NCBI GenBank assembly: GCA_973895155.1 | Contig: OZ316897.1 | Span: 8,050,470-8,114,469 of the forward strand | DNA length: 64,000 bases | From: Marsupella aquatica | Lineage: Eukaryota > Plantae > Marchantiophyta | Direction: 5' to 3' | Part shown: piece after piece, positions 18,001-64,000 of the stretch | How positions within the stretch are numbered: the stretch's first letter is position 1 | How the letters are laid out: each line of letters opens with the position of its first letter | Program-made: the position numbers and the translations under genes | The notes under the pieces: model-generated | Told to the model about the DNA's origin: nothing | What the model saw: only the letters and a program-made list of their open reading frames with translations | The model's database searches: none

Positions 18001-21000
18001 GCAACGTTTGGTGAATACCTTACACGGATACAACTTGTGCAAGCGTTCTATGGACACTTCTCTGTCCAAGGTCAAGTGAAGGCCCCTCTTAGAGGTCTCT
18101 CAATTGAAGTGGTCGCGAGGTTGTCTTATATTCTCTACAACGTGTTCAAATACTACTCCCAGTTTCTACCAATGCTGGATGAGATACTAATATCTGAGAA
18201 AGGAGCCATGGAGAAAGAACTCAAGGAGTTTGTGCGGCTTTCAAAATGGGATGACCGCAGCTACTATACTCTGACACTGTCGGCAGAGAAGTCCCATCGC
18301 AAGCTGCACAAGTTTGTAAAAAAGTACGATCAATTGCTGAAACGTTCAGTAAGTGAGATTCTAGGGAAGCAGTCATTGAAAATGGGTGCACAGAATCTGT
18401 CATACTTGGCTTCAACCGTCAAGAATGAAGACTGTTCTTCGCCACCAATAGCCAATGGAGACGATTCGCAAATAGAGGCGTCTTTATCATCTAAGACGAG
18501 CAAGACGAAAAAGGGTGTAGACGGGAAGGCAACCAAGCCTTTGGGGTTGCCTGCTGAGGAGTGGAAGTCAAGATGTGGCACGAAACTTGTGCAGCTAACG
18601 AAGTTATCCGACTTTCTTTCTGAGGCATATCCGAGAGGAGCATACTTGTACCGCTTGCCGGCGCTTACCTCGAAGATCAGTGACCTTCTCGGTGCAGCTG
18701 TCTTCTCAGATGCTAGTAGAAACAGCAGGGCGAAAGGAACTGATGACCTGGAGATGCTTTCCAAGTCGATTATTGTGCGTGCATCAGATCTTAGAAACGG
18801 TGAGCACCAACTTGCAGTGAAGAAGAGAGCTATGATTGATCTATTGAAGCGTTTACGAGAAATTGGGCTGTCACGGCATAAATCATCAGTGCCAAAGGGG
18901 CAGCGAGTTCCCAGCAGTTGGCTACAGTTACAGCCTGCTGAAGCTGGCACCATGCTTCTCCTCCATGATGGGAACGAATCTATGGCAGATCGGCAAGGGT
19001 ACACTGATATGTATGTTGTCGAGGGAACTACTTCACTTTGGACAAAGGCCAGTGACTACTACTACAAGAACATGGCACTTCTTCAGCAACTTCAGCGATC
19101 TGCTCTTGATTTCAAGGAAGGCCTTAGCTTAAAAGAAGTCGAAAATACGACCAAATACACGGAACATCTTCTATACCTCCAGCAAAGTCAGCGTAGCAAG
19201 GCCCATGAGTTTAGCTCAAAGTTAATGTTACTTGGGCACCTGATTCAAACGTTGTCTAGCTGTGGAAAGAACAACACTGCAATCCCAAGACAAGGACTCA
19301 TGAGGAAGTGGATGTGGCGGCAAAAGCTGTTTTTCGATTCACTTCAGCAAGTTCTTGCTGAAACATTATTGCTTTTCAAGATATCGGAGGGTATCCAACT
19401 ATGCCCTGCCAACTCCATGCGTATTGAAGCTGGTGCTGTGAAAGTTCTTTTGCAAGATTTTTTTGCGGGAGCAGAGAAGTGCAAGGCTCGTCTTGACTCT
19501 CGACTTCTTCTCAAGGGTAGCTGGATTGCTTTGGACGATAAAGGGGTTTCGTGGCCATTGTTATTCACACCTGCGATGCTTGAAGATCTTTTAGCAAACT
19601 TCGTCTTTCTGGATGGGACACGAGGTGCCTTCAAAAAGTTCTTTGGTGAGGACAAGACGAGCAGTACGGAGAATCTGTCTGGACTTCGGCCATTGCAACA
19701 GTTGCTTTCCAAGGGGTACGGAATGTTCAAGGAATTCGAAATGGAAACCCTTCGTTACAGCCAGGAAGCAGATGTGGTGGACCTATCTGATTTGAAGTCA
19801 CAGTTTACGCATCTCTATGACAAAATTATCACGGAGAGTCAACTGGCTGTCCAGAAAGTTAGTAAAACACAGTTTGGTGCTGGTAGTCTTGCTGAAAGGG
19901 AGGAGAAAGAAACCCTACAGGCTTACGAAGAAGCAATTATGGACCAGATTGTTTCTCTGCGCTTGACGTCTATTTATCAGGCAGTCATAAAAATTCTCAG
20001 CTTCAGTGAGAAACTCATCGACATCCACTGTAACGGGGAGGATGCTGACTTCGTCATGATCATGGGAAGATTGCTCGACTGTCTCCACGTACCGTTGGAG
20101 ATGATTCATGCTGTAGGAATGCGTCTCCTTGCCGACTACATCAGTTTACACAAATCCGTAAGTTTCCTCAACTTATTCGTGACTTCTGTTAGTTTCAATT
20201 GATTTTACTTGAGTAGATTGTTGTTTTGTTCTGATAGTGATGAACTGCTTCTGCCTACGATACCTAAGATAAACTATACTGTATTGAAAGCTTGGTTTTG
20301 TAGTGTTCACTTAAATAGACAACAATATTGATTGGTCCTTCCCTTGCAACGGAAAAAGAGTAAACTCGCTGATTCAAGGCAGTTCGTTCGTTAATCTTTT
20401 TTAATCGACTATTGGTGGCAAAGTTTCATGATCGTTCTAAGATTCTTTCTACCAGGATGCTTGCTCGCTAAGACAGGCAGGAATTTCAATAGAGGTTCTG
20501 TCCCATTTGCTGAGGTTGTACCATGCTTCTTGCAGGTGACAAAGTTGGGCTATGTGCTCTCAAATCTCTTTGTGACATTGTACACAGAAGGATACTGTAA
20601 TACCAAAGAAGAGGAAGGAAAGGAAGCGGCAAACAAATTTGATGATGCAGATGGCACAGGCATGGGAGAAGGAGAGGGGAAGAAGGATGTAAGTGAGCAG
20701 ATAGAGGACGAAGAGCAGCTGATGGGCGGAACAGAAAAGGTGAGCTTTGCATACTGTACTGGATGGATCTTTCTCTATGCCTCTTTGCAATCTCATATCC
20801 TCCTGTATCATTTGTGGAGTTCAAAAGTAGACTCAAATCTAACATTTTAGATAGTTTGTCTACTGTGACAAGTGTTGTTGTGAACTAATTGTTGCTATAA
20901 TGTTGGTGTGTAAAGGAGGAGGATGTGCAGAAGAATGACGCTGGAAAGAACGCCGACAAGGGCATCGAGATGGAACAAGACTTCTCTGGTGACATGATGG

Positions 21001-24000
21001 ACCTGAGTGAGGATGAACCGGAGGAAGAAGATGGAAATGACGAAGAGGAAGAGGAAAAGTTGGAGTCCAAGATGGGTGAAGGTGAGGATGACAGTGAAGT
21101 TGTGGATGAAAAACTTTGGAACAACGATGATGAGAAGGACCAAGAACCTGATGCCAAAGAGAAGTATGAGAAGGATTCTGCAGTTTCAGGAGTGAAGCCT
21201 GAAGATCTTGAGATGCGTGGAAAGGAAGATGAAACGACAAAAGACGATAGTGTGGAAGGGGAGAAAGGGGAGAAAGATAAAGATAAGAGTCTTTCTAAGG
21301 AAGAAATTGAAAATCAATCTGAACTCTTTCAGGAACCGGAGGGAAACCGTGAAGAGGATGATGATCAAGACAAGGAAGAGAAAGTCGAAGAGAGAAGTGG
21401 GGTCCAGCCATCCAAAGAAGAAACCCTCGACCTTCCTGAAAATCTTGATCTGGCTGGTGGAGAGGATGATGAGCAGGAAAAGGAACAGGAACAGGAACGT
21501 CAGCAGGAGGAACTTACAATCGCTGGTGATGAGCACGAAGGAAGCAAAACAACAGACGATAATGATTTGCCGGAAGACATGAATCTTGATGAAGACAATC
21601 CCGAAGATCATGATGAAGGATCAGGACTTCCAGACCCAAACCCTGGAGGTCCTGATACAGATGACGGTGCAGGTGAAGGAAGCCCTGACATGGAACTGGA
21701 CAACGAGGCTTTGAACAAAGAGCCTGATCTTGAGGAAAATGAAGCTTCTCAACTAGATGAAGCTTCTCAATTCAACAAGGAGATAGATGGGCCAGCTGAG
21801 GATGAGGACATGGAGGAGCCGAAAGAGCAAGGGGAGGATCCGTCAGACCCCCAGGACATGGATGCTAGAACGTCTGGGAAAAACCAAGAACAAACGAACG
21901 TGATTGCTGGCACAAAGGGCATTGCTTCACAGCTTAACAATGCAGATGATGAGGTTGACAAGAGAGGGACGATGGAGGCTCCACAGGAAGAAAGATCCAC
22001 AGCTGGCCTGGAACAGTCATCTCTTGAAGCTGTTGATGGCACAAACAGAACTTCTTTTCCGGAACCCTCTACGTCATCAACTAAAGATCGACAGAATTTG
22101 AAAAGGCCTGATATTAACCCCTATCGTAGTCTTGGTGACGCTTTGAAGCGTTGGAAGGAACGTATAAATGTAATTGATTCTAGTGAGGCTCCGTCAGCTG
22201 TTGACAACTCAGAAACAAAAGAGGAAGAGCCTCCTAGTGAAGGAGAAGAGGATAGGATGGAGAACGAGTTTGTGACGAAGGAGGAGCAAGGTAGTGCCCA
22301 AGCCCTTGGGTCTGCTACCAAAGAGCAACTTGCCGAGAGAAATGATCTTGAAGTTGTGCCCCACGAGGAAAACAATGCAGATGATCTGACGCAGCCAGAT
22401 ATAGACATTCCAGACCCTACGAAAGGTGAACTTGCTGATGCGATTGAGCAAACACAAGTTTCAGCAAATAGCAAAAAACACAGAAATATGAAGCCCGAAG
22501 CAGGTGATCGCATTGCTGTAAGCAGAGATGAAGATGTTGAAAGAGATATTGGCTCGTTGGGTCTTGACGATTTAACAGAGCTAATGAACTCTGCCGATGA
22601 GAGTATTGTTTCGTTACAGAGCCAGCACAATGGAGCAAATCTTTTGAGCGAACGGAAATTTTTGGAGACAGCCGCCGAGAATTGGAGTGAGGAGGAGATA
22701 AGCAGGGTTAGAAAGGAGCTGGAGGCAGGGCTAAAGGAGACGGCTGGTAATTTAGAAGCTGCCAGATTGATATGGCAAAAATATGAGCACTTGACTGCCA
22801 GACTTTCTCAGGAACTTGCTGAGCAGTTGCGAATGATATTGGAGCCTACATTGGCTGCCAGATTACAGGGCGACTACAGGACAGGGAAACGTATCAACAT
22901 GAAAAAGGTAATGGGCCAGCGTCGTAAATTGTATATTGAATCACCGTGGACTTTTCTCGTTCTCTGTTTACGGTCTCATGGTGAGTAGAGATTGTCTTAA
23001 GCTGCTAACCGTGTGGCATGTAAGTTTGCATCTCACACTTACTTCTCATCCTGCAGATTATTCCATACATTGCTAGCTCCTTCCGTAAAGATAAGATTTG
23101 GCTTCGACGCACAAAAGCTAACAAGCGGCAATATCAAGTCGTCCTGGCCATTGATGACTCTCGGAGTATGTCTGAGACTCATTGTGGACATTTGGCAGTG
23201 GAGGCTCTAATAACAATATGTAGAGCTATGTCTCAAGTAGAAATAGGACAGATGGCAGTCGCCAGTTTTGGACAGAAAGGAAATGTTCATCTTCTTCATG
23301 ACTTTGGTCAGCCCTTTTCAAGCGAAGCTGGTATCAATGTAAGTGATATACCTCTCTGTAGTTTGAGTGGCTCCTTTCTATATTTTGGACGACCCAAATG
23401 GGAAAACTGGTGACTAGTGGGTTGCTCCGGCTCAGTAGGCATCACTGCTTAGTAGCCTACAAGATGCAAATGATGTGGTGGGTTGAAATTCGTGGGAGTA
23501 CGTCTGCAAGAGGGACCTAACATATTTCTTTGTCGGTTGCAGATGGTATCTCGTTTCTCATTCAGCCAGGACAACACCATCGCTGACCAGCCAATGGTAG
23601 ACCTTCTCCAATTTCTAACTCGCATGCTGGACATGGCTGCTAATCATGCTGCTGTTCCGTCAGGCAATGTTAATTTACAGCAGCTCGTACTGATAATAGC
23701 TGATGGTCGTTTCCATGAAAAGGTACTTTCTTTTATCCCAGTCAGCATTTCTTCCATTGCCTCCACCGATGCTTCGTGGCGTAAATGCCGTGCATCTGAC
23801 AGACCTTGGCCGGCCGTCCTCCTTTTATTCGAGTAAAATTTCAGCTAAACATTTACTGGCCGCTGAGGCATATGTTGTACTATATGTCGGCACTGTGTGC
23901 TTGGTGGTGAGTATAATCTGGTAACTTGTCTGCAGGAGAGCTTGCGGAGATGCATAAGAGAGGCCACTAGCAGGAGACAACTCCTAGCTTTAATTGTGCT

Positions 24001-29503: not shown

Positions 29504-31848
29504 TCAGACAACGCCCTCTGTCAAATTCAATTCGTTAGTGTTGATGCGTGCCACTGCCCTCCATCCAATGTCATGCCTATAAAACCCTTCAGGCCAGTTG
29601 ATGCATTCAGCAACTTGGTAAGCTTTCCTCTGAGCATCTGCTATGTCTTTCCCCATGGCTGTCACTCCAAGTACTCTACCACCCACTGCTACCATGTTCT
29701 GTTGCGCGTCTAGTGCTGTGCCTGCATGGAATACCTGCACCTGTGGGCCAAAGCCTTCCGCCTCAACTAAGTTTTTGATGATGCTGCCTTTTTGGTAGTT
29801 TCCTGGATAACCTTTTGATGCCATGACTACCACCAAAGCAGGCTCATCTGCCCATTTCAGCTCAACGCCCTTGAGCTGCCCTTGACAAGCGGCCAGCAGC
29901 ACTTGGACCAGATCAGATCGAAATCTCAACATTAGAACCTGCAAGCCAACCTTTGGGTTACTATCAAATAATGGGAAAGACTTTCGAGGATATAGAGACA
30001 GCTAGCACCATTCTTACTTCTTAACGCTGGACTGTTGAATATAGGCACAAAGTAAACGTGGATTTCCGCCAATTTCTGCTTGAGTTGGTGATCATCCCAT
30101 CCCCTGTTATCTTCTATGTGGTTAGTCAACCACAATGATTAAATCCCACCAAAACCTTCGCTTGCTGTTTACGTTACGAAAAAGGATGGTTACTACTGCA
30201 TGTTTTAAAAAAATTATACGCAGTTTGGACAAACCGCAGAATACTTGATATAAAAAAGTTTGCAGCACAGTATTTGATATTCATTCTAATAATCAGGAAC
30301 AAATTATCAATGGACTGGTCCTTGTGAATCGACACATACCTGACACTCAGGATCACCAAACCGCACATTATACTCCAGAAGCTTTGGCAAACCATTCTTG
30401 TTTTCTACAATGACTCCCGCATAGAGGACACCAACAAATCTGCGCCCTTCGGCGGCCATTCCATTCACTGTGGGTAGAATGATCGAGTCCATGACAAGGG
30501 TTTGAAGCTCGGGTGTCAACACTGGTGCAGGGGAGTAAGCACCCATGCCTCCCGTATTGGGTCCTGTATCCCCATCGCCAACTCTCTTGTGATCTTGAGC
30601 TGAGGCCATAGGAACTGCAGTTTCGCCATCAACAATCGCAAAGAACGAGACTTCCTCTCCATCAAGAAATTCTTCCACAACCACCAGCCCTCCAGCAGAG
30701 CCGAATGTTCCTTCCACCAGCATGGAATCCACTGCTTCAAAGGCTTCTTCCAAAGTGTTGGCAATAATGACCCCTTTACCCGCTGCTAGACCATCAGCCT
30801 TCACCACGATGGGAAGCTCTTGCTCCTTGATGTACTTCTTGGCCTCCTCGGCATTGGTGAAAGATCCATACTGCAAAGCAGAGCATTAACAGAAGAAAAA
30901 ATGTTTTCAATACTTCGGTTTCTTGGTGCAACTAGACTATGACCTCAAAACTAGAACAGAAATTGGTACATATGATTCTTAGAACCGAGCTATCAGCCAC
31001 ATTTTTGCATTATTGTCGGGCTGACTGGTCACATCAGCTATTGACTTGCAAGGTTGCACTCCAGATGTCAAAAACACGCATGAGAGAGCCCCAGAGGAAG
31101 TTCACGAGTAGACCACAAGTGCAGAAAGATGTGTTCAAATAGGGTTTTCATTGTTTAGGAGTCAGTCTCTCCCTACCTGGGCGGTGGGGATGTGATACTT
31201 ATCACAGAGTCGCTTCATAAAGGTCTTGGAGCCTTCCAAGGCTGCTGCAGCAGCAGAGGGACCAAAAGTGGGGATTCCACATTCAATGAGGTCGTCAACA
31301 AGACCAGAAACAAGAGGCCCCTCAGGTCCCACGACGACCAAGCCCACCCCCCATTCCTTGCAGAAGGAAGCAACCGCGGAGCTGTCAGTAATATTGAGGT
31401 TTGAGACACAAGTGGCAGTACCAGAGCTCGATATTCCTGCATTACCCGGTGCACAGAAAACTCCGGCACATGAAACGGACCGTCTCAATCCATAGCACAA
31501 AGAGTGCTCCCTTCCTCCACCTCCTAAAACTAAGCAAACCACCCCTTCCTCTGCTGCCTTCTTGTCACTCAAATGGTCAGCAACTTCCGCACTGCTGAGA
31601 CCTTCACTCTTGCTCCGGGTGGACAAGCTCCGATCCCTGCGTGTGCCTTGCCTGGTATTAAGACTCATGGGAGCCAAGGGCATCGAAGATTTACGCAAAG
31701 CTGCGCCACCCCACCACCTCTCCCGGGAGCAGCGGACACCAGAGGCATCACCTAACCTCAATTGGTTTCCGAATACCGTTCGGTTCACAATTACCCATGA
31801 TCCAAAATTCTCCAAGGCAGCAAAAGCTGTAACAGGCAATGTCATCAT
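29504..31848 (-). CDS. PUR2: Phosphoribosylamine-glycine ligase (GAR synthetase) with organellar transit peptide; exons 31848-31177, 30870-30340, 29938-29504
   Basis: Motifs [107 protein letters not shown]. Two phase-0 GT-AG introns. The ORF-track start at 31908 is GTG; the first in-frame ATG is at 31848. Confidence 0.96.
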
Positions 31849-31974
31849 TGGAGCACCTGGGTCGTGAACCGAGAGAGTAATTCCACCAAAACCCGAGCAC
31901 CCATTCACTACTACAACTCAAAATCCTCTCCCTAACCAAATTCTTCTCCGTCCGTCCGTCCTTATGGCCTTTGT

Positions 31975-46327: not shown

Positions 46328-47404
46328 ATGGCGGCCGCAAATGGGAGGCGACCTGCTCTGAAATTGCCAATTCCAGCCAGGGATTCTAGTAGCTTCAACA
46401 GAATGATGAGTCCTGCAGCGATGCCCCTCCCTCTGCCCCCTTCCGCGGCTTCCTCTCCTGCCGGCTCTTACCCTCCACAGTATGCGTTCACTCCCAGCCC
46501 GGGCGGGCAGTTCAGGCTGCCTTTCCCACCGTCGCAGGAGAGGGATGTGCAGCTGGAGGATCTGGAGAGATGTGGGCTGTTAGGGTGCGGAAGCGAGGGG
46601 AAAGTCTACAAGGTGCGGCACAAGAAAACCGGCAAAATGTATGCGCTGAAGATCATCCAGGAGAAGCACGAACCGGCCTTGATGAGGCAAATCATTAGGG
46701 AAATGGAGATTCTCAAGGGGGCGAATTCGAAGTACATCGTGCAGTGCTTCGGTGTTTATGAGAAGGGTGGTGAAATTTCGTTCGTGCTTGAGTATATGGA
46801 CGCTGGAACTCTAGCAGATGTGCTCCAAAAGCAGAAGAAAATATCCGAAAAGTACCTCGCTGAGATGACCAAACAAGTGCTGACTGGATTAGTATATCTC
46901 CACAAGAGGAAGATTGTGCACCGGGACATAAAGCCGTCGAATCTGCTTCTCAACCATAAACGGGAAGTAAAGATTGCGGATTTCGGAGTGAGCACAGTGC
47001 TGGCTCACACCATGGCTCAGTGCAATTCTTTTGTAGGCACTTGTGCTTACATGAGTCCCGAAAGATTCAATCCAGATGGGAATGGGGGCAACTACGATGG
47101 GTATTCGGCTGATATTTGGAGCTTGGGGCTCACTCTTTTAGAATGCGCAATTGGGCGATTTCCGTGCCTGCAGCCTGGGGAGAATCCGGATTGGCCCACT
47201 CTCATGTGCGCAATTTGCTTGGGAGATCCTCCGTCTCCACCACCCGATGCCTCACCTGAATTCAAAGATTTCATCCGGCGGTGCTTGCAAAAGGATCCCT
47301 TGCTAAGACCTCTAGCTGCAAAGCTTCTAACTCATCCGTTTCTTCTCAAGTACGAAGGATACCCTGCTGATCTTACTGCCATACTACATTCCCTTCAATT
47401 ATGA
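46328..47404 (+). CDS. Mitogen-activated protein kinase kinase, intronless, plant group C/D type (MKK4/5 or MKK7/9-like)
   Basis: Docking site RRPALKLPI, GCGSEGKV, YALK, HRDIKPSNLL, DFGVS, activation loop T-x5-S (TMAQCNS), VGTCAYMSPERF, DIWSLG. Single 358-aa ORF. Confidence 0.96.
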   Translation: MAAANGRRPALKLPIPARDSSSFNRMMSPAAMPLPLPPSAASSPAGSYPPQYAFTPSPGGQFRLPFPPSQERDVQLEDLERCGLLGCGSEGKVYKVRHKKTGKMYALKIIQEKHEPALMRQIIREMEILKGANSKYIVQCFGVYEKGGEISFVLEYMDAGTLADVLQKQKKISEKYLAEMTKQVLTGLVYLHKRKIVHRDIKPSNLLLNHKREVKIADFGVSTVLAHTMAQCNSFVGTCAYMSPERFNPDGNGGNYDGYSADIWSLGLTLLECAIGRFPCLQPGENPDWPTLMCAICLGDPPSPPPDASPEFKDFIRRCLQKDPLLRPLAAKLLTHPFLLKYEGYPADLTAILHSLQL

Positions 47405-55970: not shown

Positions 55971-57379
55971 GGTTTGCATGAACCACCGGCCCTTGACGTA
56001 CATATCCTAAGGAACATGGATAGTTCTAGGAAATTGTACTAGCTTGAACTCTTCCGATCCTGAGAATATAACTGAAATGCTAAAAAAAAATTCTGATTGC
56101 TACAATTCTAACTGGACGGTGCACTTCAGGCGGATATGGCTTGGGTCCTCAGCTTCGTCAAACAGTAATTAACCAAATTTCACAGGCAGGTCAGAAGGTC
56201 ATGATCTATGTAGCTAATGGCTTTGGGTTTTTGGATTGGACCACCGGCCATGCGTGGACAAAAAGCAGGCAAGTCACGGATACTTCAAGGAAATTCTTGC
56301 TGCGCTTCACATTGCTGGGAATAGATTATCTAATAGAATTAATATCTGTACTCATCACCAGTTCATTGCTAGCATAAATTTACATGTCAATTGCAATTCA
56401 GTCGAATATGTCTTTGGGCCCTCGAATTCTGCTTGTAGTAGTAACCAAATTCACGGGTGTATTCACGTGTAGCCGAGCCTTCGGATAACTTCCATCTTTT
56501 CTTTCCCACATGAGGCATCCCACCGTCCTCTCTATGTCCGGCTTAATTGTTTTATTCCGATCCTGGTCGGACTAGTCTGAAGCTATCATCCAAGGTCATC
56601 ATCGTGTCAGGCCGCGATTCATGCTGGATCTGGAAGGTATAATGACATGTACATCTGGACAGCATGATCGACGAAAAAATCCCCCCAAGAGATCATCTCG
56701 AGACTAATGTCAGAGCGATCACACTCTCGACTTTGCTGAATGGACCTCGAAGGTCACATAAAGTCGCCCAGCACGAGTGGTTAAAGCTCCAGAACTCGAT
56801 GATCATTCAATCGATCCCCGAAACTTCAAAAACATTGTCACGAGTCTACTTGTCGGTGTAATCACAGTGCCACTAGGCTTTCATGAAATGCCGACTTCAT
56901 CCAGCTCAACCCATCGTTGATTTGTAGTACTGTTATATAGTTTCAACAGCTATATGCAGCCTCATTAGCGTAACTGCGCCTGTTCCCAAGTCTGCATACT
57001 CAGCTTAAAATATCGTAATAGAGAAGTTGAAAAAAAGGTGTCGACGAGCTTAGCAGTAAGTATAAAGAGTTCGAGGACGAGTTCCGTCAGCATCGGTTTG
57101 GAATTGTGAGCTGTTATTGTGAGCTGTTTATGTACACGTGCATACTAATTACACATGATCGTTACATCATTTTGGTCAGTTGGCTGCAGGAAGGTGAATT
57201 GAATGATCGGAGGAATGAAGAATGAAAAGATATAGTAAAGAAGCGGGAATATTGCATTTGAGCGAATGATCTCCAATATGTTGGCTGACCGTCATGTAGA
57301 TGAAGCGAATCGGGAGGGGGCTGTCGAATGTGCGAATTGTGGAAAACTAGTCGAGAGCCGAGTAGACTTGGGGCAGATC

Positions 57380-60300
57380 ATGGACAGGGATCATAGCTAC
57401 AGGAGTCGGACCGTCTGCCGACGTTCAAGTTCGGGTTATGGACTGTACGCCAAACGCTTTGACAGTTCGTTCAAACTGTCGAAGTTGCTCGTGATCGTCA
57501 TCCAATTACTCTACCTGTCCAGCTTTTGTCGCGGTGGTCTACTCGGTGGTGGATTCGATCCTACATGGGTGAAATCTGACGCAGGTATGTCGATCAGAAT
57601 CGGAACATTGCTGCAATTTACTTGCAATTACTAATTCCCACTTTTCTTGATGAACCGACTGATTATGAAAAGCTATATAATGTACAGGGGAAAGAAATCA
57701 TATAGAGTGCTAAGGAATTTCCATAAAATGGGTTCTGAATTAGATTGGTGCTTAGGTGTAGAGGCTTAGTTATAGAATGGCTGTAGATAACCTTTGGAGC
57801 CGGAGCTCCTGTATCAGTCAATTATATATGATGATGTAGTCTGAAAGTTGATTAAGCAAGACAACATTATTTACCATTTTTCAGAGAGAAAGTTTGACCG
57901 TATTGTAGAAGGGCTGTGGGAAACCTTTGGAGCCAGCAGTCTGAATGAATTTTTCAATTAATTATCGATATAGTCAAGCTGGTCCCGCACCGAAGTGGTA
58001 AAGAAACGTGACATTGAATCGAAGTCGATCAAAACCCGTACATTTTAAGCGTCTGGCCCAGAATCAAATGTTTTTTTGTTCTCAGCTGGTTGTCTTCAAT
58101 TATCAAATTAAATTATTTAAGTCAAGTCAACAATTGAATTGATGAGTTATGGAACTAGTGCCGGCAGGTATCTTTCAAGTTAGCTACCGGTGTTCAAACC
58201 AAGATGAATCATGACTCATTCTATCACACTCTCTTGATGACATAGCCACTTAGCTACTTCTCGTAACATTTGAATCTTATACATGGAGTCAAGATAACAA
58301 CTAGATAGTTACTCTCAAAGTCTTCATTTTTCCCAAGTAATTATTAACAGATTTAATAGTCAAAGAAGTGTTCCTACGATTCTTAGAACTCAAAAATTGT
58401 TCTGGTGCCTTTTGCAGAGTTGCTAGCCTCCAACTTCCTCACATTTTTTGCTGTTTGAAACGTTCAAATGACTTCATTCGTATGCCCATTTGAAACTGAC
58501 ATTGTCTATACAAACAGGAAGAGGCAAAGGAAGGTTGTTGTTCTCGAGTCTAGCATCGGTATCAAATTACTGCACGAAATCCTACACCGCAGTACAGGGC
58601 GAGACCTGTGCATCACTGCGCACTTCGTCAGGGCTGTCGCAAGAGCAGATTTTCGAAGTGAACCCGGGGCTCGACTGCAAGACGCTATCGAAGGGACAGA
58701 GCATTTGTGTGGAAGGAATTGCTGCCAACTGTGCGGCCACAATCTCTGTGAACAAAGGACCGACTAACACCACCTGCGCCAGCATTGCAGCAGGCAGGCT
58801 GTCTACGCAAGGATTCTTCGTCCTCAACCCCGGAATCAGCTGTCCAGAGGCATCGGGAAACAACAACTCGTGGCCCGCATCGCAACTGGTCTGTGTCTCT
58901 ACAGGTACGTACTAAACTGTTGGAACCATTTCGATGATTGATTTGTTCTCTTGGAAAGAAAGGACCAGCCCCCTTCGATGACTGATTGGGGAATGTCGAC
59001 GGAGTTTTGTCACAGATTTAGCCATAGACCACAAATCAATTGGTTTAATTTGCTCAATTGATGGACATCCATTGGAGATCATTAGGGCTTTCGGTCATGG
59101 AATTGCTGATGTCTGATAATTTCTCTCTTATGTTCACTGCCAGCATTATAGAGCTGTGAAGTGCGACGTCATCAGAATTATCGAAAACACCACAAACTGT
59201 CAATTCGTTAAACTTTGTGAATGGGATATTAATTGGAGAATTCTTAGAGATTTAGATCATGAATGTAATATTATCGATTGCTGATTCGTCTCTTATATAA
59301 TTCACTGCCCACCTACATGGAGCTGTGAAGTGCGACCTCTGACTCTCGAAAGACAATTGATGTGGTCTTTTTGTCTCATGGCTCATTTTGACCCAACTGA
59401 CTTCAAATTTCTTCATGAATTCTTCATCCATTTATTTCCAGGACTTGGCAGCCTCTTCACCGAGTACATAGGAGACTCAGGACTACCCATAACATTCGCA
59501 GAAGTGCAGCCTCTGTATCAAAAGTATTCATCCGTGATCACGCATCTCATTCTCGCTTTCGTCAACGACATTGACGCCAATGGCACCAGCACGAACGGCG
59601 TGTTCCATCCATATTGGAACTCAGCCCTCACTCCAGCGGCAGCGAAAGCATTCAAGGCAGCGAACCCTGACGTCCGACTGCTCATGAGCCTGGGTGGACC
59701 TTCTTCCAGCTGGAAGGACCCTGGAGCCAAAGCTACCGAGTGGATCGACACCGCGCAAGCGTCCCTCACCACCATAGCCACGGACTACTCGATTGACGGG
59801 ATCGACATCGCGTACGAGAGCTTCCCCCAGGGCAGCGCCAACTTTACTTACTGTGTGGGGACTCTGATCGCACAACTCAAAGGAAACAACACCATCGGAC
59901 TCGCAACCATGGCGCCGGCTGGGGCTGTGTTGTCGGAGTACACGAGCATAATGGACAGTTTCAGCAATCAGATTGACTATGTGAACTTCCAGTTTTACTC
60001 CTATCAGCTCCTCACTGTGGACAATTATATTGCAGAGTTCAACACTATTGCCTACTCATTCCCGCCATGGAAGCTGCTGGCCAGCACTCAGATCGGCGGA
60101 ACGAAATGCATTACCGGACCTTCGTTTTTGGAGGCCGTGGAAAAGATACAGCTCGCTAGAGGGCTTCCTGGAGTGATGATGTTTGATGTCGATCATTCCG
60201 TGGGTAATAATTTTCAGGACGAGAATCTCGTTTTGTCCCTTCTCAATGGGGAGCCGTATAACAACATCACAAACTCGACGACTCTTGGACCAACGCTCGC

Positions 60301-61427
60301 ACCATCGCCATCGCCGTCTTTCGGCCCCCCCAAGTCTCCAGTACCGAGCTCAGGTCCTGCTCAAGGTCCTCTTGCACCTGGATCCAGCAAAGCTCCCGCC
60401 CCCGGAGCAACCAATTCAAGCCAGGCTCCTGGACCTCTTGCACCTGGATCCAGCAAAGCTCCCGCCCCCGGAGCAACCAATTCAAGCCAGGCTCCTGGAC
60501 CTCTTGCACCTGGATCTAGCAAAGCTCCTGCTCTTGGTCCTGGGGCACCTCATTCAGGCTTAACGCCTGGTCTTGCTCCCGGTTCCAGTCTCGCTCCTGG
60601 ATCTGCTGCACCCGGATCTGGATCTGCTGCACCTGGGTCCAGCCCACCTGTTGGTTCTGCAGGATCACCGGGATCTAGCGCAGGCAACTTAGCTCCACAG
60701 ACACCGCCATCGAGCTCAGCGCCTAAACGTAAGTGTACTTCTTCTCCTCAGTCTCCTTCTTATATATAAGGAAGAGTCCCGTTCATTTATTTCCACCTTG
60801 AGTAGAGAACGTTTCCTGATCGAAATATCAAGATAACTTCTGGACTCATGAATGCACAGTACAAAGTAATGTCGCGCGGCAACAATTAGATGGTAGAAAA
60901 CTTCATGTACATTTCAGGAGATATTGTTAAAATCTAAAGTCAGAACCAGGCTCTGGGTGGAGACCCCTTTCGTTACAGACCTATGATTGGACCTGTAGCT
61001 GTGAAGTCTCTGAAAAAAGGGAATTAATGAATCCTTTATAATTGCGCTAACTGGCCCTAGGTTTTATTCATGAAAATTCTAAGAACAATCTCAGATTGAC
61101 CAGTCTAATAATTGGTCCTCCTGGATTTGGACGGCTAGGTCCCACTTTAAAATTCCAAATTATATCCCACCCTGTTCTTGGAATGTACATGTAGGCTTCG
61201 AATTCTAGATATTGAAGAGGCAGCAGATAATGCCAGCTTGAGCTTCAGAAGAAAGGCAGTATTGGTTCTACTGTACTTTCAAAGTCATTTTCCTCATCAG
61301 CTAGCTAACATTTGTATGAATTGTCTGGATAATGTTTCACTTCTCAGGTTTTCGAAGGACCAGAGCATGGTCTTCCCAAGGGTTCGGCCTTGTTACCGCA
61401 ATATTGGTTCTACTGCTCTCTTGGTAG
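57380..61427 (+). CDS. Chimeric 2xLysM / GH18 (class IIIb, narbonin-like) chitinase-like protein with Pro/Ala/Ser/Gly stalk and GPI-like C-terminus, about 652 aa
   Basis: Exons 57380-57584, 58518-58904, 59442-60728, 61348-61427, with three phase-1 GT-AG introns (1959 nt, open). Hydrophobic segment LLVIVIQLLYLSSFC. LysM1: CTKSYTAVQGETC..NPGLDCKTLSKGQSICV. LysM2: C..TCASIA..LNPGISC..LVCV. GH18-IIIb motifs LFTEYIG, HLILAF, MSLGG, DGIDIAYE, IDYVNFQFY. Tail SSSAPKRFRRTRAWSSQGFGLVTAILVLLLSW*. Start codon uncertain (in-frame ATGs also at 57266 and 57278). Confidence 0.88.
60365..60532 (+). repeat. Coding tandem repeat, 66 nt / 22 aa, about 2.5 copies
   Basis: GPLAPGSSKAPAPGATNSSQAP is repeated almost identically at the DNA level. 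Confidence 0.93.
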
Positions 61428-64000
61428 GGACCTTAATGCGTGCTGACAAACAAAGAGCTCCGAGGGAGATGAACATCACATCATAATGAAGCGTGTAATG
61501 AAAGTCGAGTAATCTGAGTCAAAGAGTCCGAGCTTGTGGACAACGGTATTGCACAGAAACGATAATATTTGCAATGGTCGGGTTTGGCACAAGAGATTAT
61601 GCACTCGGGGAGAAGTCTTTCTCCAGAATTTTGACCTCAAATAAGGACGTGTGATTTCAAAATCAGAGTCCATCCACGTAGTGTTCACGAACAGAATGGA
61701 ATGTAAGAATGCTCATTTGTTTGAAACTTCCTGGATGTATAGAGAACTTTCTTTCTTTTTAGTGTAGAGTGCTTGTGTATAGCAGTAATTCTGCAGACTC
61801 GGAAACTGAGGCTCCGTCAATTTTATGAAATAAAACTCATCACTGGCCTCCGATCAGTTGATTAACATGGCGTCTGATTTACTGACATATATGTCCTGCA
61901 TGATAGCTAGCTGGAGCATCTTCAGGCGAGACTAGCTTCAGGGGTAATTATGAGTTGAGCAATTGGCCAGACTCTGCGCCATTCAGTTCTGAAAATGTCA
62001 GAGGACTCGCGTGTGCCACTTTTACGGTGTTCTCAAGCCTTGGCATATGAATGAGAAGGTCAAGACCATCAGGAACCTCTTAGCTTTGGTATCTGCCGAA
62101 CAACATCAACTGAAATTTGAGTGTCATATCTCCAGATACTTTCGCAGCAGTTTTCCCCCTCATGCGACTATAAATTGATTGGGTAAACTGAGCTGAGAAT
62201 GAAATTTCAATTCAATTAAGACTTCTTTCTTTGCCAGATCAGGAAGTGCAGCATGATAATGCACCAGATGTTCTTCTTTGTGTGCGAATTACTAGAAGTT
62301 GGGTGATTCTAACATTGATGGCTTCCAACTTAATTAATTCTGTTTTGTTAGGTTGATCGCAGCAGAGCTACCTTAGTCCACACCAAAAAGGACTGATAAA
62401 ATAACAATCTCAAAATGCAGTCGCTCGTTCTCAACTTGGGGTGCCAGGAATCCTGCACAATGATGATTTTTTGTAAAACCAAATAATTTACATTGGATAA
62501 CATAATGAACTCAATTTAAACCACCACTGTCCTTCCCACTTCTCTCCTCTAGGGTGAGACTTTGCTCCACAATTTCAGGGGAAAAGTCTAAAAATGGTGA
62601 AACCTGGTGGATCCAGGTTTTGTCATGGACAGTGGCTTTTAAGGGTAAAACCAGATAAATTACATTGGATAGCAAACCGGAATTTGTTGAAGCTGAGAAT
62701 TATTTGGTATGATCTACCTAGTGTTGGACACACTTATATTCAGGTATCTCGAGTAAAGGTAGAACCAAAACTGGTCTAGGTGGCTCGTCAACTGAGTAAC
62801 ACACTGTAAGTAAAGTGTGAAAGTATTGTGCTCTGGAAACAAATAACTGATTGTAATCTATTCAGAAAATTATGTTTGAATGTACAGGATTGAGTGCTGG
62901 AGATGTCCAAAAAGTCCCAAGTTTTTTCACCTTAAGTTCAAATATCACACCAAACAGATTTCAGCTCAAACAAATTTCATTTCATGTTCTAAAAAAACAT
63001 TAGGTTTCACCAGAAATTTGCATTCTGCAGGTTTCGTGGCGCCCCTTGACGAGAAGTCGCGCCGTGGGGAGGCAGACCATGGATTAACTATCATGGGCTT
63101 ACTGCATTTTCATAATTTCAGAAGGTCTAGTAGAGAAGGTGTAAGTCCTTTGGTGGTGTAGTGTCCATCAAGTAATGAAGATGTAATGCCTTCTTTGCTG
63201 GTGGCAATCGCAGCAAGACACTTTTTACATATGGGTGAACGAGGAGTCCTGGAAACTTGGGGTCTTTTTAATATGATGTGATGTCGACGAAAATAGTCCC
63301 CGAATCTACCAATTCTGACATTCGAGCATGATCAATTATTGTCTCTATTTCTAGGCATGAGATCCATCTCAGACATTCTCAAGCCTACAGCTATTATCGT
63401 AGGTATTCTTCGCAATGCGCTGTTACTCGTCCCCAAAATCCCAGCCAAGACAGTTTTGGTGGCCTTTTTCACTGAACACGACAGTAATGGCCAAATCTTT
63501 CAGTGCCAGGGACTTGCTCCTCGCCACTTACAGCCAGGTAAGCTATGAAGGTTGGTGGCTCTCACAATTTGCTTTCCGGAGCTGGTCCTCGACACTGGAA
63601 GGGAGAGATCAAGTAACCAACACTCAACCTTATAAGGAGATTTCCATTTAACGAGTGATGCACCGGAGTCCTTTCCCTTTACACAACTATTTTCTACTGT
63701 ACCGATAGGGAAGGTTCGAGAGATCATTGGCTGGCATTCACATCGGTTTGCTCACCTTTTCTTTGTTGCATGTGTCGTTTCTTGTTTCGAATTATGAAAT
63801 GTTGTCAAGTTCTATATTAAATTCAGGAGGGGCATATCATTAATTTCCCAAAAGCGAGCGGTATCATTACAGAACTGTTGAACACGTCGATCAGTCGGAA
63901 AAATATATAAAAATTCAAAGTAGATGAAACATATGTTTTCACGGTTGGCAGCTTCAATCTTTTCTGAGCTGCAGCTCATTGTTACTGTCACTAGCACGAC

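What the first reader, a model, noticed from the sequence alone, without database searches (positions are those of the whole stretch)
57380..61427. Candidate GPI-anchored LysM-LysM-GH18-AGP chimera: a surface-tethered chitin sensor or decoy
Seen: three separate ORF-track entries plus an unlisted 80-nt exon (61348-61427) join through phase-1 introns into one protein with a hydrophobic leader, two four-Cys LysM domains, a class IIIb GH18 barrel, a Pro/Ala/Ser/Gly stalk of about 140 aa, and small residues (SSSA) plus spacer plus a terminal hydrophobic tail. Known: LysM-GH18 IIIb fusions are described from a fern and a horsetail (PrChi-A, EaChiA) as soluble chitinases, while GPI-anchored LysM proteins without an enzyme domain (CEBiP, LYM2) are chitin receptors in angiosperms. 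Inference: this protein combines both designs and could capture, present or trim chitin oligomers at the plasma membrane in immunity or fungal symbiosis. I do not know a characterised protein with this full architecture.
Basis: partly seen in the sequence, partly recalled or inferred. Interest (0 to 1): 0.85.

Follow-up and report, generated by a model that had tools for sequence, protein, structure and literature searches.

The report
Liverwort membrane-tethered LysM chitinase-like protein
This is a real four-exon liverwort gene for a cell-surface protein that joins two chitin-binding LysM modules, a chitinase-type barrel lacking one key catalytic residue, a long sugar-coated stalk and a probable lipid (GPI) anchor, so it more likely holds fungal chitin at the cell surface than digests it.

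Summary
Exons 57380-57584, 58518-58904, 59442-60728 and 61348-61427 join through GT..AG phase-1 introns. They encode a leader, two LysM domains, a class IIIb GH18 barrel (closest structure PrChi-A, 4RL3), a 156-residue Pro/Ala/Ser/Gly stalk and a 15-residue hydrophobic C-terminus.

No RNA run was available, so support is comparative.
- Annotated orthologues in Calypogeia fissa have the same four exons, phases and tail.
- Marchantia polymorpha MpGH18.7 and its M. paleacea orthologue carry a comparable tail; in M. polymorpha a separate phase-1 exon encodes it.
- Window-to-Calypogeia DNA similarity is confined to the exons, including exon 4, apart from short non-coding blocks at both ends.

Calypogeia has DGIDIYYD. 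Marchantia and the outgroups keep the canonical motif. In the tree the loss is derived, and it coincides with the long stalk.

My reading is a surface-tethered, probably GPI-anchored, catalytically impaired chitin-binding protein. Three points are untested: GPI attachment, signal-peptide cleavage (the leader is unusually long and the start codon ambiguous) and chitin binding. I found no paper on this architecture, though public gene models exist. I rate it a new variant of a known kind. The scan's only other note on this stretch (s1-787072) is the same first-stage reading.

The parts
57266..57379 (+).
   Evidence: The ORF is open from 57266. Similarity to Calypogeia begins at 57267, and the annotated Calypogeia start aligns with 57278. 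Against its use, the divergent copy in runs X3/X4 skips 20 nt at 57301-57322, which is not a multiple of 3.
57380..57584 (+). Exon 1. It holds an ATG conserved in Calypogeia, a basic 35-residue N-region, a hydrophobic core at 57485-57529 (LLVIVIQLLYLSSFC) and a phase-1 donor.
   Evidence: The same junction is present in the Calypogeia model and the Marchantia model has a matching phase-1 leader intron.
58518..58904 (+). Exon 2, with two four-Cys LysM domains at about 58571-58717 and 58730-58900.
   Evidence: Pfam LysM, PDB 5bum and 4pxv, an AF2 model with two beta-alpha-alpha-beta units and Foldseek LysM hits. The blastn block against Calypogeia, 58514-58910, matches the exon almost exactly.
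59442..60259 (+). First part of exon 3: the class IIIb GH18 (beta/alpha)8 barrel.
   Evidence: Pfam GH18, 4RL3 at 5.5e-46, a model with pLDDT 91.8 and Foldseek hits to 4rl3, 3sim, 7xmh and 1nar.
59795..59818 (+). Degenerate catalytic motif DGIDIAYE. The Ala codon GCG at 59810-59812 replaces the Asp of D-x-E, and the Glu codon at 59816-59818 is kept.
   Evidence: Alignments to 4rl3, 3sim and 7xmh, which all have D at this position. Orthologue alignment, motif survey and tree. No variant at this site is among the differences listed for the divergent copy (114 further differences were not shown).
60260..60728 (+). Second part of exon 3: a 156-residue Pro/Ser/Ala/Gly stalk with AGP-like glycomotifs. 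It includes a 66-nt tandem repeat at 60368-60528. The donor is AAC|gtaagt.
   Evidence: Composition: PAST 65%, AP x18, PG x14, GP x7, SP x5 and no PPP. Tandem repeat. Calypogeia has a longer homologous stalk.
61348..61427 (+). Exon 4: a basic spacer, then W-S-S-Q, then the hydrophobic C-terminus GFGLVTAILVLLLSW (61380-61424) and the stop codon. This is the candidate GPI-attachment signal.
   Evidence: for the translation. It sits in an isolated island of similarity to Calypogeia, 61305-61454. Calypogeia has a homologous phase-1 last exon, and so does Marchantia. The only listed change in the divergent copy is Val to Leu.
57585..58517 (+). Intron 1, phase 1.
   Evidence: GT..AG ends, no similarity to Calypogeia, and indels of the divergent copy at 58375, 58391 and 58481.
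58905..59441 (+). Intron 2, phase 1. It is absent from the Marchantia orthologue.
   Evidence: GT..AG ends. Indels at 59391 and 59435 lie inside the long ORF but upstream of the acceptor. Marchantia has one fused exon here.
60729..61347 (+). Intron 3, phase 1. Reading through it would end the protein at the stop codon at 60767-60769.
   Evidence: The donor is GTAAGT. The divergent-copy contigs from 60729 show 16 changes and 5 gaps in 284 nt, against 18 changes in 888 nt of exon 3. The read-through peptide is not shared with Calypogeia (splice context).

Best explanation
This is a functional four-exon liverwort gene. It is the orthologue of Marchantia MpGH18.7 and of two Calypogeia fissa genes.

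The product enters the secretory pathway through an N-terminal hydrophobic segment. It carries two disulphide-stabilised LysM domains of the fern and horsetail 'chitinase-A' type, followed by a class IIIb GH18 barrel. A roughly 156-residue stalk, probably Hyp-O-glycosylated and AGP-like, holds this head away from the membrane. The protein is most likely fixed to the outer leaflet of the plasma membrane by a GPI anchor, added in exchange for the 15-residue hydrophobic C-terminus encoded by the last exon.

The Asp that positions the substrate's N-acetyl group in GH18 substrate-assisted catalysis is Ala here. The head is therefore expected to bind GlcNAc oligomers or chitin with little or no hydrolysis, acting as a tethered chitin-binding lectin in the wall space at the plant-fungus interface.

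Shown: exon structure, domain folds, loss of the motif Asp, and conservation of the tail exon. Inferred: signal cleavage, GPI attachment, O-glycosylation, chitin binding, loss of activity and biological role.
For: Gene model:
- Splice sites are canonical and all introns are phase 1.
- The annotated Calypogeia model P0006 is reproduced exactly by four exons with phase-1 introns at the same positions.
- Marchantia MpGH18.7 shares the leader intron and the tail intron, both phase 1.
- Within the gene (57267-61454), DNA similarity to Calypogeia is confined to the four exons; it also appears in short non-coding blocks upstream (56607-56773) and downstream of the stop (61619-61690, 61826-61862).
- None of the 12 listed indels, nor the one listed 20-nt skip, of the 3-6% divergent copy falls in an exon, although exons make up 36% of the stretch.

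Constraint:
- Against the divergent copy, exon 3 has 8 synonymous and 5 non-synonymous changed codons.
- Against Calypogeia, the GH18 domain has dN 0.25 and dS 0.66.

Folds.

Catalytic decay:
- The motif is DGIDIAYE, against DGIDIDYE in 4rl3 and 3sim and DGVDVDYE in 7xmh.
- Calypogeia has DGIDIYYD, and Marchantia has DGIDIDFE.
- In the tree, window plus Calypogeia (support 99/97) sits inside a liverwort clade (100/99) whose sister and outgroups keep the Asp.
- D-to-A at this position appears among the GH18 point mutants crystallised with ligands (3n13 D143A; 8hw7 D129A/E131A). A review reports that mutating the stabilising aspartate abolishes hydrolysis (PMC3257436).

Tail:
- A hydrophobic C-terminus with no cytosolic residues, preceded by small residues, is conserved in three genera.
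- Among the 160 class IIIb-like proteins fetched, the automated 14-residue hydropathy screen flagged only the two Calypogeia proteins; the Marchantia tails fall below its threshold and were identified by reading.

Stalk composition.
Against: - No transcript evidence was available. All four runs are DNA, so the 60728/61348 junction rests on comparative evidence only.
- No GPI or signal-peptide predictor could be run.
- The omega region here is less canonical than in Calypogeia. Here a basic KRFRRTR spacer is followed by A-W-S, whereas Calypogeia has G-S-G.
- The N-terminal region before the hydrophobic core is 35 residues, or about 70 if the upstream ATG is used. That is long for a cleaved signal peptide and could instead make a type II signal anchor.
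- The catalytic Glu, the Q-x-Y element and every residue invariant across the 22-sequence family alignment are retained, so residual activity cannot be excluded.
- dN/dS of about 0.4 is rather relaxed.
- LysM and GH18 folds also bind peptidoglycan or other GlcNAc glycans, so chitin is not proven as the ligand.
Confidence: 0.6

Rival explanations
1. It is still an active, membrane-tethered chitinase, as its Marchantia orthologue with an intact motif probably is. It would trim fungal wall chitin or release chitin oligomers at the cell surface, and the Ala substitution would only lower its rate.
For: The catalytic Glu, the first two Asp residues of the motif, the Q-x-Y element and all residues invariant across the 22-sequence alignment are kept. 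The GH18 domain is under purifying selection. Non-canonical residues at this position are frequent in class IIIb-like proteins, for example DINYE x9 and DVYYE x6, and I could not establish which of those are active.
Against: Ala cannot hydrogen-bond to the acetamido group or to the Glu as Asp or Asn can. D-to-A at this position appears among the GH18 point mutants crystallised with ligands, and mutating the stabilising Asp abolishes hydrolysis (PMC3257436). The sister lineage Calypogeia has gone further, losing the Glu and the Gln of Q-x-Y as well, which points to relaxed selection on catalysis in this clade.
Confidence: 0.2
2. The protein is not GPI-anchored. Either transcripts read through the donor at 60729 and give a soluble secreted or wall protein ending at the stop at 60767-60769, or the hydrophobic ends act as plain membrane segments: an N-terminal signal anchor, a C-terminal helix, or both.
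For: There is no RNA evidence here. One older Marchantia model (OAE27591, 490 aa) reads through the equivalent donor. The N-region is very long. The spacer before the tail is strongly basic.
Against: Exon 4 lies in an isolated block of conservation with its acceptor, frame, hydrophobicity and stop kept in Calypogeia, and an equivalent tail exon exists in Marchantia. The read-through peptides are unrelated between species. Divergence rises to intron level right after 60728. The tail has only 12-15 hydrophobic residues, no residue follows it, and the basic residues lie on the luminal side. That layout fits a GPI signal and does not fit a type I anchor.
Confidence: 0.13
3. It is a decaying or functionless gene copy whose catalytic site is eroding because the gene is no longer needed.
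For: The catalytic Asp is lost, dN/dS is fairly high in exon 1 and the LysM exon, and the window lacks about 5-11 residues of a GH18 loop present in its liverwort orthologues.
Against: The 652-codon frame across four exons is intact and all splice sites are canonical. None of the listed differences or indels in the second, divergent copy breaks the frame within an exon (further ones were not shown). The GH18 domain has a synonymous excess. The models are of high confidence. The same design is kept in Calypogeia at dS of about 0.5-0.7.
Confidence: 0.05

Closest known systems
PrChi-A (Pteris ryukyuensis) and EaChiA (Equisetum arvense) LysM-GH18 chitinases
   Same: They have N-terminal Cys-paired LysM domain(s) followed by a class IIIb GH18 barrel. 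They are the best sequence and structure matches for both parts: 4rl3 at 5.5e-46 with TM 0.85/0.91, and 5bum, 4pxv and 5ylg at 1.0 A rmsd.
   Different: The fern PrChi-A-like protein examined here (Ceratopteris, P0031) and the 4RL3 catalytic domain have a canonical DGIDIDYE motif, and the Ceratopteris protein has no long stalk and no hydrophobic C-terminus. The window protein has D-x-A-x-E, a 156-residue Pro-rich stalk and a tail exon.
Marchantia polymorpha MpGH18.7 (PTQ30996 / BBN11987), its M. paleacea orthologue, and Calypogeia fissa CAM6127541 / CAM6097716. All are annotated but uncharacterised.
   Same: They are orthologues: a liverwort clade with 100/99 support. They share the long basic leader, two LysM domains, GH18, a Pro-rich linker and a hydrophobic C-terminus. 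In M. polymorpha and Calypogeia, whose loci were examined, a separate phase-1 last exon encodes that tail.
   Different: Marchantia keeps DGIDIDFE, has only a stalk of about 13 residues, and lacks the LysM|GH18 intron. Calypogeia has a longer stalk (about 230-250 residues) and a more degraded motif (DGIDIYYD). I found no publication on any of them.
CEBiP / LYM2 / MpLYP (LYP-type GPI-anchored LysM receptor proteins)
   Same: The proposed working principle is the same: an extracellular LysM chitin binder held at the plasma membrane by a GPI anchor, with no cytoplasmic domain (background: PMC2728734; bioRxiv 10.1101/2022.12.28.521631).
   Different: LYPs have three tightly packed LysM domains and no enzyme-like domain. 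The LysM domains here are of the chitinase-A type, and OsCEBiP appears only as a weak structural match with probability 0.57. The window protein is not a member of that family.
Fungal GPI-anchored GH18 chitinases (for example Aspergillus nidulans ChiA)
   Same: A GH18 domain is tethered to the cell surface by a GPI anchor (PMC3257436). That these fungal enzymes also carry a Ser/Thr-rich glycosylated linker is from memory, not from the paper.
   Different: They are fungal enzymes that act on the organism's own chitin wall, belong to a different GH18 subgroup, have no LysM domains and are catalytically intact.
Plant GH18 chitinase-like proteins without activity (narbonin, concanavalin B, XIP-type inhibitors, tamarind TCLL)
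   Same: They keep a GH18 barrel with substitutions in the DxxDxDxE motif and are reused for binding. Narbonin (1nar) is the fourth-best structural match. Background: PMC3091745 and the abstract of PMC3662789.
   Different: The narbonin chain matched here (290 residues) is a bare GH18 barrel with no LysM region; none of these proteins is, to my knowledge, described with LysM domains, a stalk or a membrane anchor.

Membership tests
GH18 class IIIb (plant chitinase-A / tulip-type clade) | A (beta/alpha)8 GH18 fold closest to class IIIb structures. | tested here: met
   Pfam PF00704 at 8.5e-14. PDB sequence hits 4rl3, 3sim, 7xmh (rice class IIIb) and 1nar. AF2 model with pLDDT 91.8. The Foldseek top four are the same entries.
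GH18 class IIIb (plant chitinase-A / tulip-type clade) | An intact catalytic DxxDxDxE motif, required of an active chitinase. | tested here: not met
   The motif is DGIDIAYE, with Ala at 59810-59812 in place of the Asp next to the Glu. It belongs to the fold family but probably not to the active enzymes.
GH18 class IIIb (plant chitinase-A / tulip-type clade) | Measurable chitinase activity. | not testable with these tools
   This needs recombinant protein and an enzyme assay.
LysM-chitinase (PrChi-A / EaChiA type) | N-terminal LysM domain(s) with conserved Cys pairs, fused to the GH18 domain in one polypeptide. | tested here: met
   Two beta-alpha-alpha-beta units with four Cys each. The fusion is supported by phase-compatible splice sites and by orthologues in which LysM and GH18 are joined, within a single exon in Marchantia. 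The second LysM is not detected by the Pfam HMM; it is seen only in the model.
GPI-anchored proteins | An N-terminal cleavable signal peptide. | tested here: inconclusive
   There is a 15-residue hydrophobic core followed by small residues (S-F-C-R-G), but it is preceded by at least 35 mostly basic residues. The long N-region is shared with the Calypogeia and Marchantia orthologues. No SignalP-type tool was available.
GPI-anchored proteins | A C-terminal signal: small omega residues, a polar spacer, and a hydrophobic stretch of 10-20 residues ending the protein. | tested here: inconclusive
   By inspection, SSSA or A-W-S are candidate omega sites, and the 15-residue hydrophobic end has mean Kyte-Doolittle hydropathy 2.2 with nothing after it. 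The tail is conserved in Calypogeia, which has G-S-G, a 7-residue spacer and 12 hydrophobic residues, and in Marchantia. No NetGPI, PredGPI or big-PI tool was available.
GPI-anchored proteins | Actual lipid anchoring, shown by PI-PLC release or mass spectrometry. | not testable with these tools
   This needs an experiment.
Chimeric arabinogalactan proteins | A Pro/Ala/Ser/Thr-rich region (over 50%) with non-contiguous AP/SP/TP/GP glycomotifs next to a non-AGP domain. | tested here: met
   The stalk is 156 residues with PAST 65%, AP x18, PG x14, GP x7, SP x5, TP x2 and no PPP.
Chimeric arabinogalactan proteins | Hyp-O-arabinogalactan glycosylation, or beta-Yariv reactivity. | not testable with these tools
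   This needs biochemistry.
LYP / LYM (CEBiP-type) LysM receptor proteins | Three LysM domains packed into one ectodomain by CxC disulphides, with no enzyme domain. | tested here: not met
   There are only two LysM domains, of chitinase-A type, plus a GH18 barrel. CEBiP and CERK1 ectodomains appear only as weak Foldseek matches, with probability 0.57 or less.
GH18 chitinase-like lectins (pseudo-enzymes) | A GH18 fold with a substitution of a catalytic-motif residue. | tested here: met
   D to A in D-x-E. The change is derived within the window plus Calypogeia clade.
GH18 chitinase-like lectins (pseudo-enzymes) | Glycan binding without hydrolysis. | not testable with these tools
   This needs binding and activity assays.

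The most novel reading that the evidence does not exclude
In the liverwort lineage that holds this genome and Calypogeia, an ancestral membrane-tethered LysM-chitinase (the state still seen in Marchantia) has been converted into a non-catalytic chitin receptor or lectin. It stands on an AGP-like stalk and carries a GPI anchor. This would be a CEBiP-like surface chitin binder that arose independently from an enzyme. Catalytic decay and stalk elongation would have evolved together, and the protein could feed chitin fragments to LysM receptor kinases or shield against fungal hyphae.
Probability: 0.3. Interest if true: 0.75.

Novelty: new variant of a known kind. Interest (0 to 1): 0.55.

Why it matters
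Two designs for handling chitin at the plant surface are well studied: soluble chitinases, and GPI-anchored LysM receptor proteins with no enzyme domain. This liverwort family combines them in one polypeptide.

Within the family, the catalytic motif ranges from intact to degraded. Marchantia has an intact motif and a short stalk. This genome has lost the Asp and has a long stalk. Calypogeia has lost both the Asp and the Glu and has a longer stalk.

That series is a natural case for asking how an enzyme becomes a receptor or lectin. The Marchantia orthologue, MpGH18.7, sits in a genetically tractable model, so the question can be tested directly. It also shows that automated annotation can drop the short tail exon and so miss the membrane tether, as one older Marchantia model did.

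Tried and rejected
RNA evidence. The look-up of sequencing runs listed four holders, none recorded as RNA. Laying them showed contigs across all introns and GATC-ended loose ends, which suggests Hi-C-type DNA libraries, and no splice joints at the predicted junctions. Transcription and the junctions therefore remain unobserved.

Word-indexed protein search. The GH18 part found only relatives at 36% identity or less. A three-sequence profile was swamped by low-complexity stalk words and added only the M. paleacea orthologue. The exhaustive representative search is what found the orthologues.

Literature. Four searches found no paper on a LysM-GH18 protein with a membrane anchor in plants, and none on MpGH18.7.

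Joined protein. Every search and fold used single exons by reference. A local script only counted the length, frame and stops of the joined CDS, and its temporary file was deleted in the script.

Ideas rejected:
- An alternative first exon inside intron 1. The LysM frame has no ATG upstream of 58518, and Calypogeia uses the same exon-1 junction.
- Read-through to the stop at 60767-60769 as the main form. See the rival explanations.
- A paralogue elsewhere in the window. There is none.
- The upstream conserved block as a known RNA. Rfam gave no hit and the consensus fold showed no covariation.

Full report
**1. What is in the sequence**

The region 57380-61427 holds four open pieces in compatible frames on the + strand.
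- Exon 1: 57380-57584, donor CGCAG|gtatgt.
- Exon 2: 58518-58904, acceptor caaacag|, donor TACAG|gtacgt.
- Exon 3: 59442-60728, acceptor tttccag|, donor TAAAC|gtaagt.
- Exon 4: 61348-61427, acceptor cttctcag|, stop at 61425-61427.

All three introns are phase 1. The exon lengths sum to 1959 nt, which is 652 codons plus a stop, with no internal stop. Every database search and structure prediction used one exon at a time by reference. only counted length, frame and stops locally, and its temporary file was deleted in the script.

**2. Domains, exon by exon**

*Exon 1.* It encodes a basic 35-residue N-region with net charge +5, then the hydrophobic core LLVIVIQLLYLSSFC.

*Exon 2.*
- Pfam LysM scores 5e-6.
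- Its best PDB sequence matches are the LysM domains of the Equisetum and Pteris chitinase-A proteins, 5bum and 4pxv.
- An AlphaFold model built from an orthologue alignment has pLDDT 82 and shows two beta-alpha-alpha-beta units, at residues 18-66 and 73-127.
- Foldseek returns almost only LysM proteins, with 1.0 A rmsd to the PrChi-A LysM.
- So there are two LysM domains. The Pfam HMM misses the second, which carries an insertion before its last strand.

*Exon 3, first part.*
- It begins exactly where the GH18 domain of PrChi-A begins.
- Scores are Pfam GH18 8.5e-14, 4RL3 5.5e-46, Crocus 3SIM 7.9e-32, rice class IIIb 7XMH 2.8e-29 and narbonin 9e-17.
- The model has pLDDT 91.8 and superposes on 4RL3 with TM-scores of 0.85 and 0.91 at 1.6 A.

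*Exon 3, second part.* This is a 156-residue stalk.
- Composition is 23% Pro, 21% Ser, 17% Ala and 15% Gly.
- Pro+Ala+Ser+Thr is 65%.
- Motif counts are AP x18, PG x14, GP x7 and SP x5, with no contiguous PPP.
- It includes a 66-nt tandem repeat.
- By established knowledge (the Hyp-contiguity rule), this is the arabinogalactan-type pattern, not the extensin type.

*Exon 4.* It encodes a basic spacer and then GFGLVTAILVLLLSW as the very end of the protein.

**3. Is the gene model right?**

No RNA evidence could be obtained. The four runs that hold the stretch are DNA contigs covering the introns. The support is therefore comparative, and it is good.

(a) An exhaustive profile-free search with the GH18 part found a 774-residue protein at 65% identity. 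It and a 795-residue sister come from the leafy liverwort Calypogeia fissa. They share the same leader, the same exon-1/exon-2 junction residues, two LysM domains, GH18, a longer Pro/Ser/Ala/Gly stalk, and a tail ending in a 12-15-residue hydrophobic stretch.

(b) I mapped that model onto its locus L001. It has four exons, all introns are phase 1, and the junctions sit at positions homologous to those in the window. The joined exons translate exactly to the deposited protein.

(c) Within the gene, blastn between the window and L001 finds similarity only at these places:
- 57267-57597, which is exon 1 plus the upstream ORF;
- 58514-58910, which is exon 2;
- 59396-60619, which is exon 3;
- 61305-61454, an island that holds exon 4.

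Outside the gene it also finds a short upstream block (56607-56773) and two blocks downstream of the stop (61619-61690, 61826-61862), which are probably 3' UTR. The introns do not align.

(d) Marchantia polymorpha MpGH18.7 (516 aa) and its M. paleacea orthologue (515 aa) belong to the same clade. They also end in a hydrophobic tail. In M. polymorpha a separate 95-nt phase-1 exon encodes it. The leader intron is shared too, and the LysM|GH18 intron is absent there.

(e) Runs X3 and X4 hold a second copy of the locus that is 3-6% divergent. None of its 12 listed indels, nor the one listed 20-nt skip, falls in an exon, although exons make up 36% of the stretch. Two indels, at 59391 and 59435, lie inside the long ORF just upstream of the proposed acceptor at 59442. 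Divergence jumps to intron level immediately after 60728. Only part of the differences was listed by the tool.

(f) The read-through alternative would end at the stop at 60767-60769. It gives peptides that are unrelated between the window and Calypogeia. One older Marchantia model (490 aa) does read through the equivalent donor, which shows how annotation loses the tail.

**4. Selection**

- Against the divergent copy, exon 3 has 8 synonymous and 5 non-synonymous changed codons. Exons 1 and 2 have mostly non-synonymous changes, and exon 4 has one Val-to-Leu change.
- Against Calypogeia, Nei-Gojobori dN/dS is 0.25/0.66 for GH18, 0.25/0.60 for LysM1, 0.27/0.44 for LysM2 and 0.30/0.70 for exon 4.
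- The gene is constrained, though less tightly than a housekeeping enzyme. It is not a pseudogene.

**5.

- In 4RL3 and 3SIM the motif is DGIDIDYE, and in 7XMH it is DGVDVDYE. The window has DGIDIAYE, with the GCG codon at 59810-59812.
- By established knowledge of GH18 substrate-assisted catalysis, the Asp next to the catalytic Glu orients the substrate's N-acetyl group and stabilises the oxazolinium intermediate.
- D-to-A at this position appears among the GH18 point mutants crystallised with ligands, for example 3n13 D143A and 8hw7 D129A/E131A (listed). A review notes that mutating the stabilising aspartate abolishes hydrolysis (PMC3257436).
- Calypogeia has DGIDIYYD and has also changed the Gln of the Q-x-Y element to Lys. 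Both Marchantia species keep DGIDIDFE.
- In a maximum-likelihood tree the liverwort proteins form a clade (support 100/99). Window plus Calypogeia (99/97) is sister to Marchantia, and the outgroups keep the Asp. The loss is therefore derived.
- The replacements differ: Ala here, from a GCG codon, and Tyr in Calypogeia. Ala and Tyr codons are each one step from an Asp codon but two steps from each other, so the changes may be independent.
- The same clade has the long stalk: 156 residues here and about 230-250 in Calypogeia, against about 13 in Marchantia.
- All residues invariant across the 22-sequence family alignment are retained in the window protein. The fold and the binding groove are probably intact.
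- Non-canonical motifs are common in the wider class IIIb-like family. This fits the literature view that the GH18 scaffold is often reused for non-enzymatic roles (PMC3091745; PMC3662789 abstract).

**6. Most likely mechanism**

*Shown:* the exon structure, the two LysM folds, the GH18 fold, the motif change, the stalk composition and the conserved tail exon.

*Inferred:*
- The hydrophobic N-terminal segment targets the protein to the ER.
- The C-terminal 15-residue hydrophobic end is exchanged for a GPI anchor. It has no cytosolic residues after it, basic residues on its luminal side, and small residues upstream.
- The stalk is Hyp-O-glycosylated.
- The LysM pair and the GH18 groove bind GlcNAc oligomers with little turnover.

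The result would be a chitin-binding head held tens of nanometres out from the plasma membrane.

The gene is kept in M. polymorpha. From my own knowledge, not tested here, that species does not form mycorrhiza. This argues for a general surface or immune role rather than a symbiosis-specific one.

**7. Open points**

- *Leader.* It is atypical. There are 35 residues before the hydrophobic core if translation starts at 57380. There are about 70 if it starts at 57266 or 57278, and the Calypogeia model starts at the ATG homologous to 57278. The divergent copy skips 20 nt at 57301-57322, which argues against the upstream start at least in that copy. A type II signal anchor cannot be excluded.
- *Omega region.* It is less canonical here (A-W-S after a KRFRRTR spacer, or SSSA with a 13-residue basic spacer) than in Calypogeia (G-S-G).
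- *Tools.* No SignalP or NetGPI-type tool was available.

**8. Comparison with what is known, and novelty**

- By fold and descent, this is a member of the LysM plus GH18 class IIIb 'chitinase-A' family, but it fails the intact-motif test for an active enzyme.
- By proposed mechanism, it resembles GPI-anchored LysM receptor proteins such as CEBiP, LYM2 and MpLYP. It is not a member of that family, because it has two chitinase-type LysM domains rather than a three-LysM bundle.
- Fungal GPI-anchored GH18 chitinases such as A. nidulans ChiA share the tether design.
- I found no paper describing a plant LysM-GH18 protein with a membrane tether, and none on MpGH18.7.
- Orthologous gene models are public, so the family itself is not new.
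- The points I did not find described in any paper are the combination of tether, stalk and LysM-GH18 head, and the graded catalytic decay across liverworts. I rate this a new variant of a known kind.
- The scan's findings index holds only the same first-stage reading of this stretch.

Noticed in passing
window 56607-56773 (compare L001:5183-5364): A non-coding block about 500-650 nt upstream of the ORF is about 81% identical to the Calypogeia locus in the MAFFT alignment (74% in the blastn hit), at least as well kept as the coding exons (70-75%). Rfam gave no hit and the consensus fold showed no covariation. It could be a promoter element or a 5' UTR exon, since it contains GGAAG|GTA.
   Followed up: partly
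window 56800-62200, runs X3 and X4: The runs labelled organism B hold both a copy identical to the window and a copy 3-6% divergent across the whole locus. This suggests an allopolyploid, a hybrid or a mixed sample that includes the window's genome.
   Followed up: partly
window 60368-60528: A 66-nt tandem repeat (2.4 copies, 98% identical) encodes a 22-residue stalk repeat. The contigs of run X1 break exactly here, so stalk length may vary or be mis-assembled.
   Followed up: partly
L002:3001-5384 (Marchantia polymorpha MpGH18.7): The Marchantia orthologue has three exons (3001-3181, 3530-4804, 5290-5384). It shares the leader and tail introns, both phase 1, but lacks the LysM|GH18 intron. 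An older model of the same gene (OAE27591, 490 aa) reads through the last donor and so loses the hydrophobic tail.
   Followed up: yes
proteins P0001-P0155 (class IIIb-like GH18 representatives): Non-canonical catalytic motifs are frequent in this family: DINYE x9, DVYYE x6, DIHYD x5, and DIAYE in two angiosperm-type sequences. Many members may be pseudo-enzymes. One representative, P0017, carries a hevein-type chitin-binding domain instead of LysM.
   Followed up: partly
window 5043-23000 (+), 29504-31908 (-), 46328-47404 (+): The neighbouring genes are a midasin-type AAA ATPase with a single 2,428-codon exon at 12916-20202, phosphoribosylglycinamide synthetase (GARS), and a protein kinase in one exon.
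   Followed up: partly
window exon 3 residues about 86-92 (around 59700-59720): Relative to Calypogeia and Marchantia, the window protein lacks about 5-11 residues of the loop after the S-L-G-G strand (the xxYVNSxD segment). The effect on the substrate groove is unknown.
   Followed up: no
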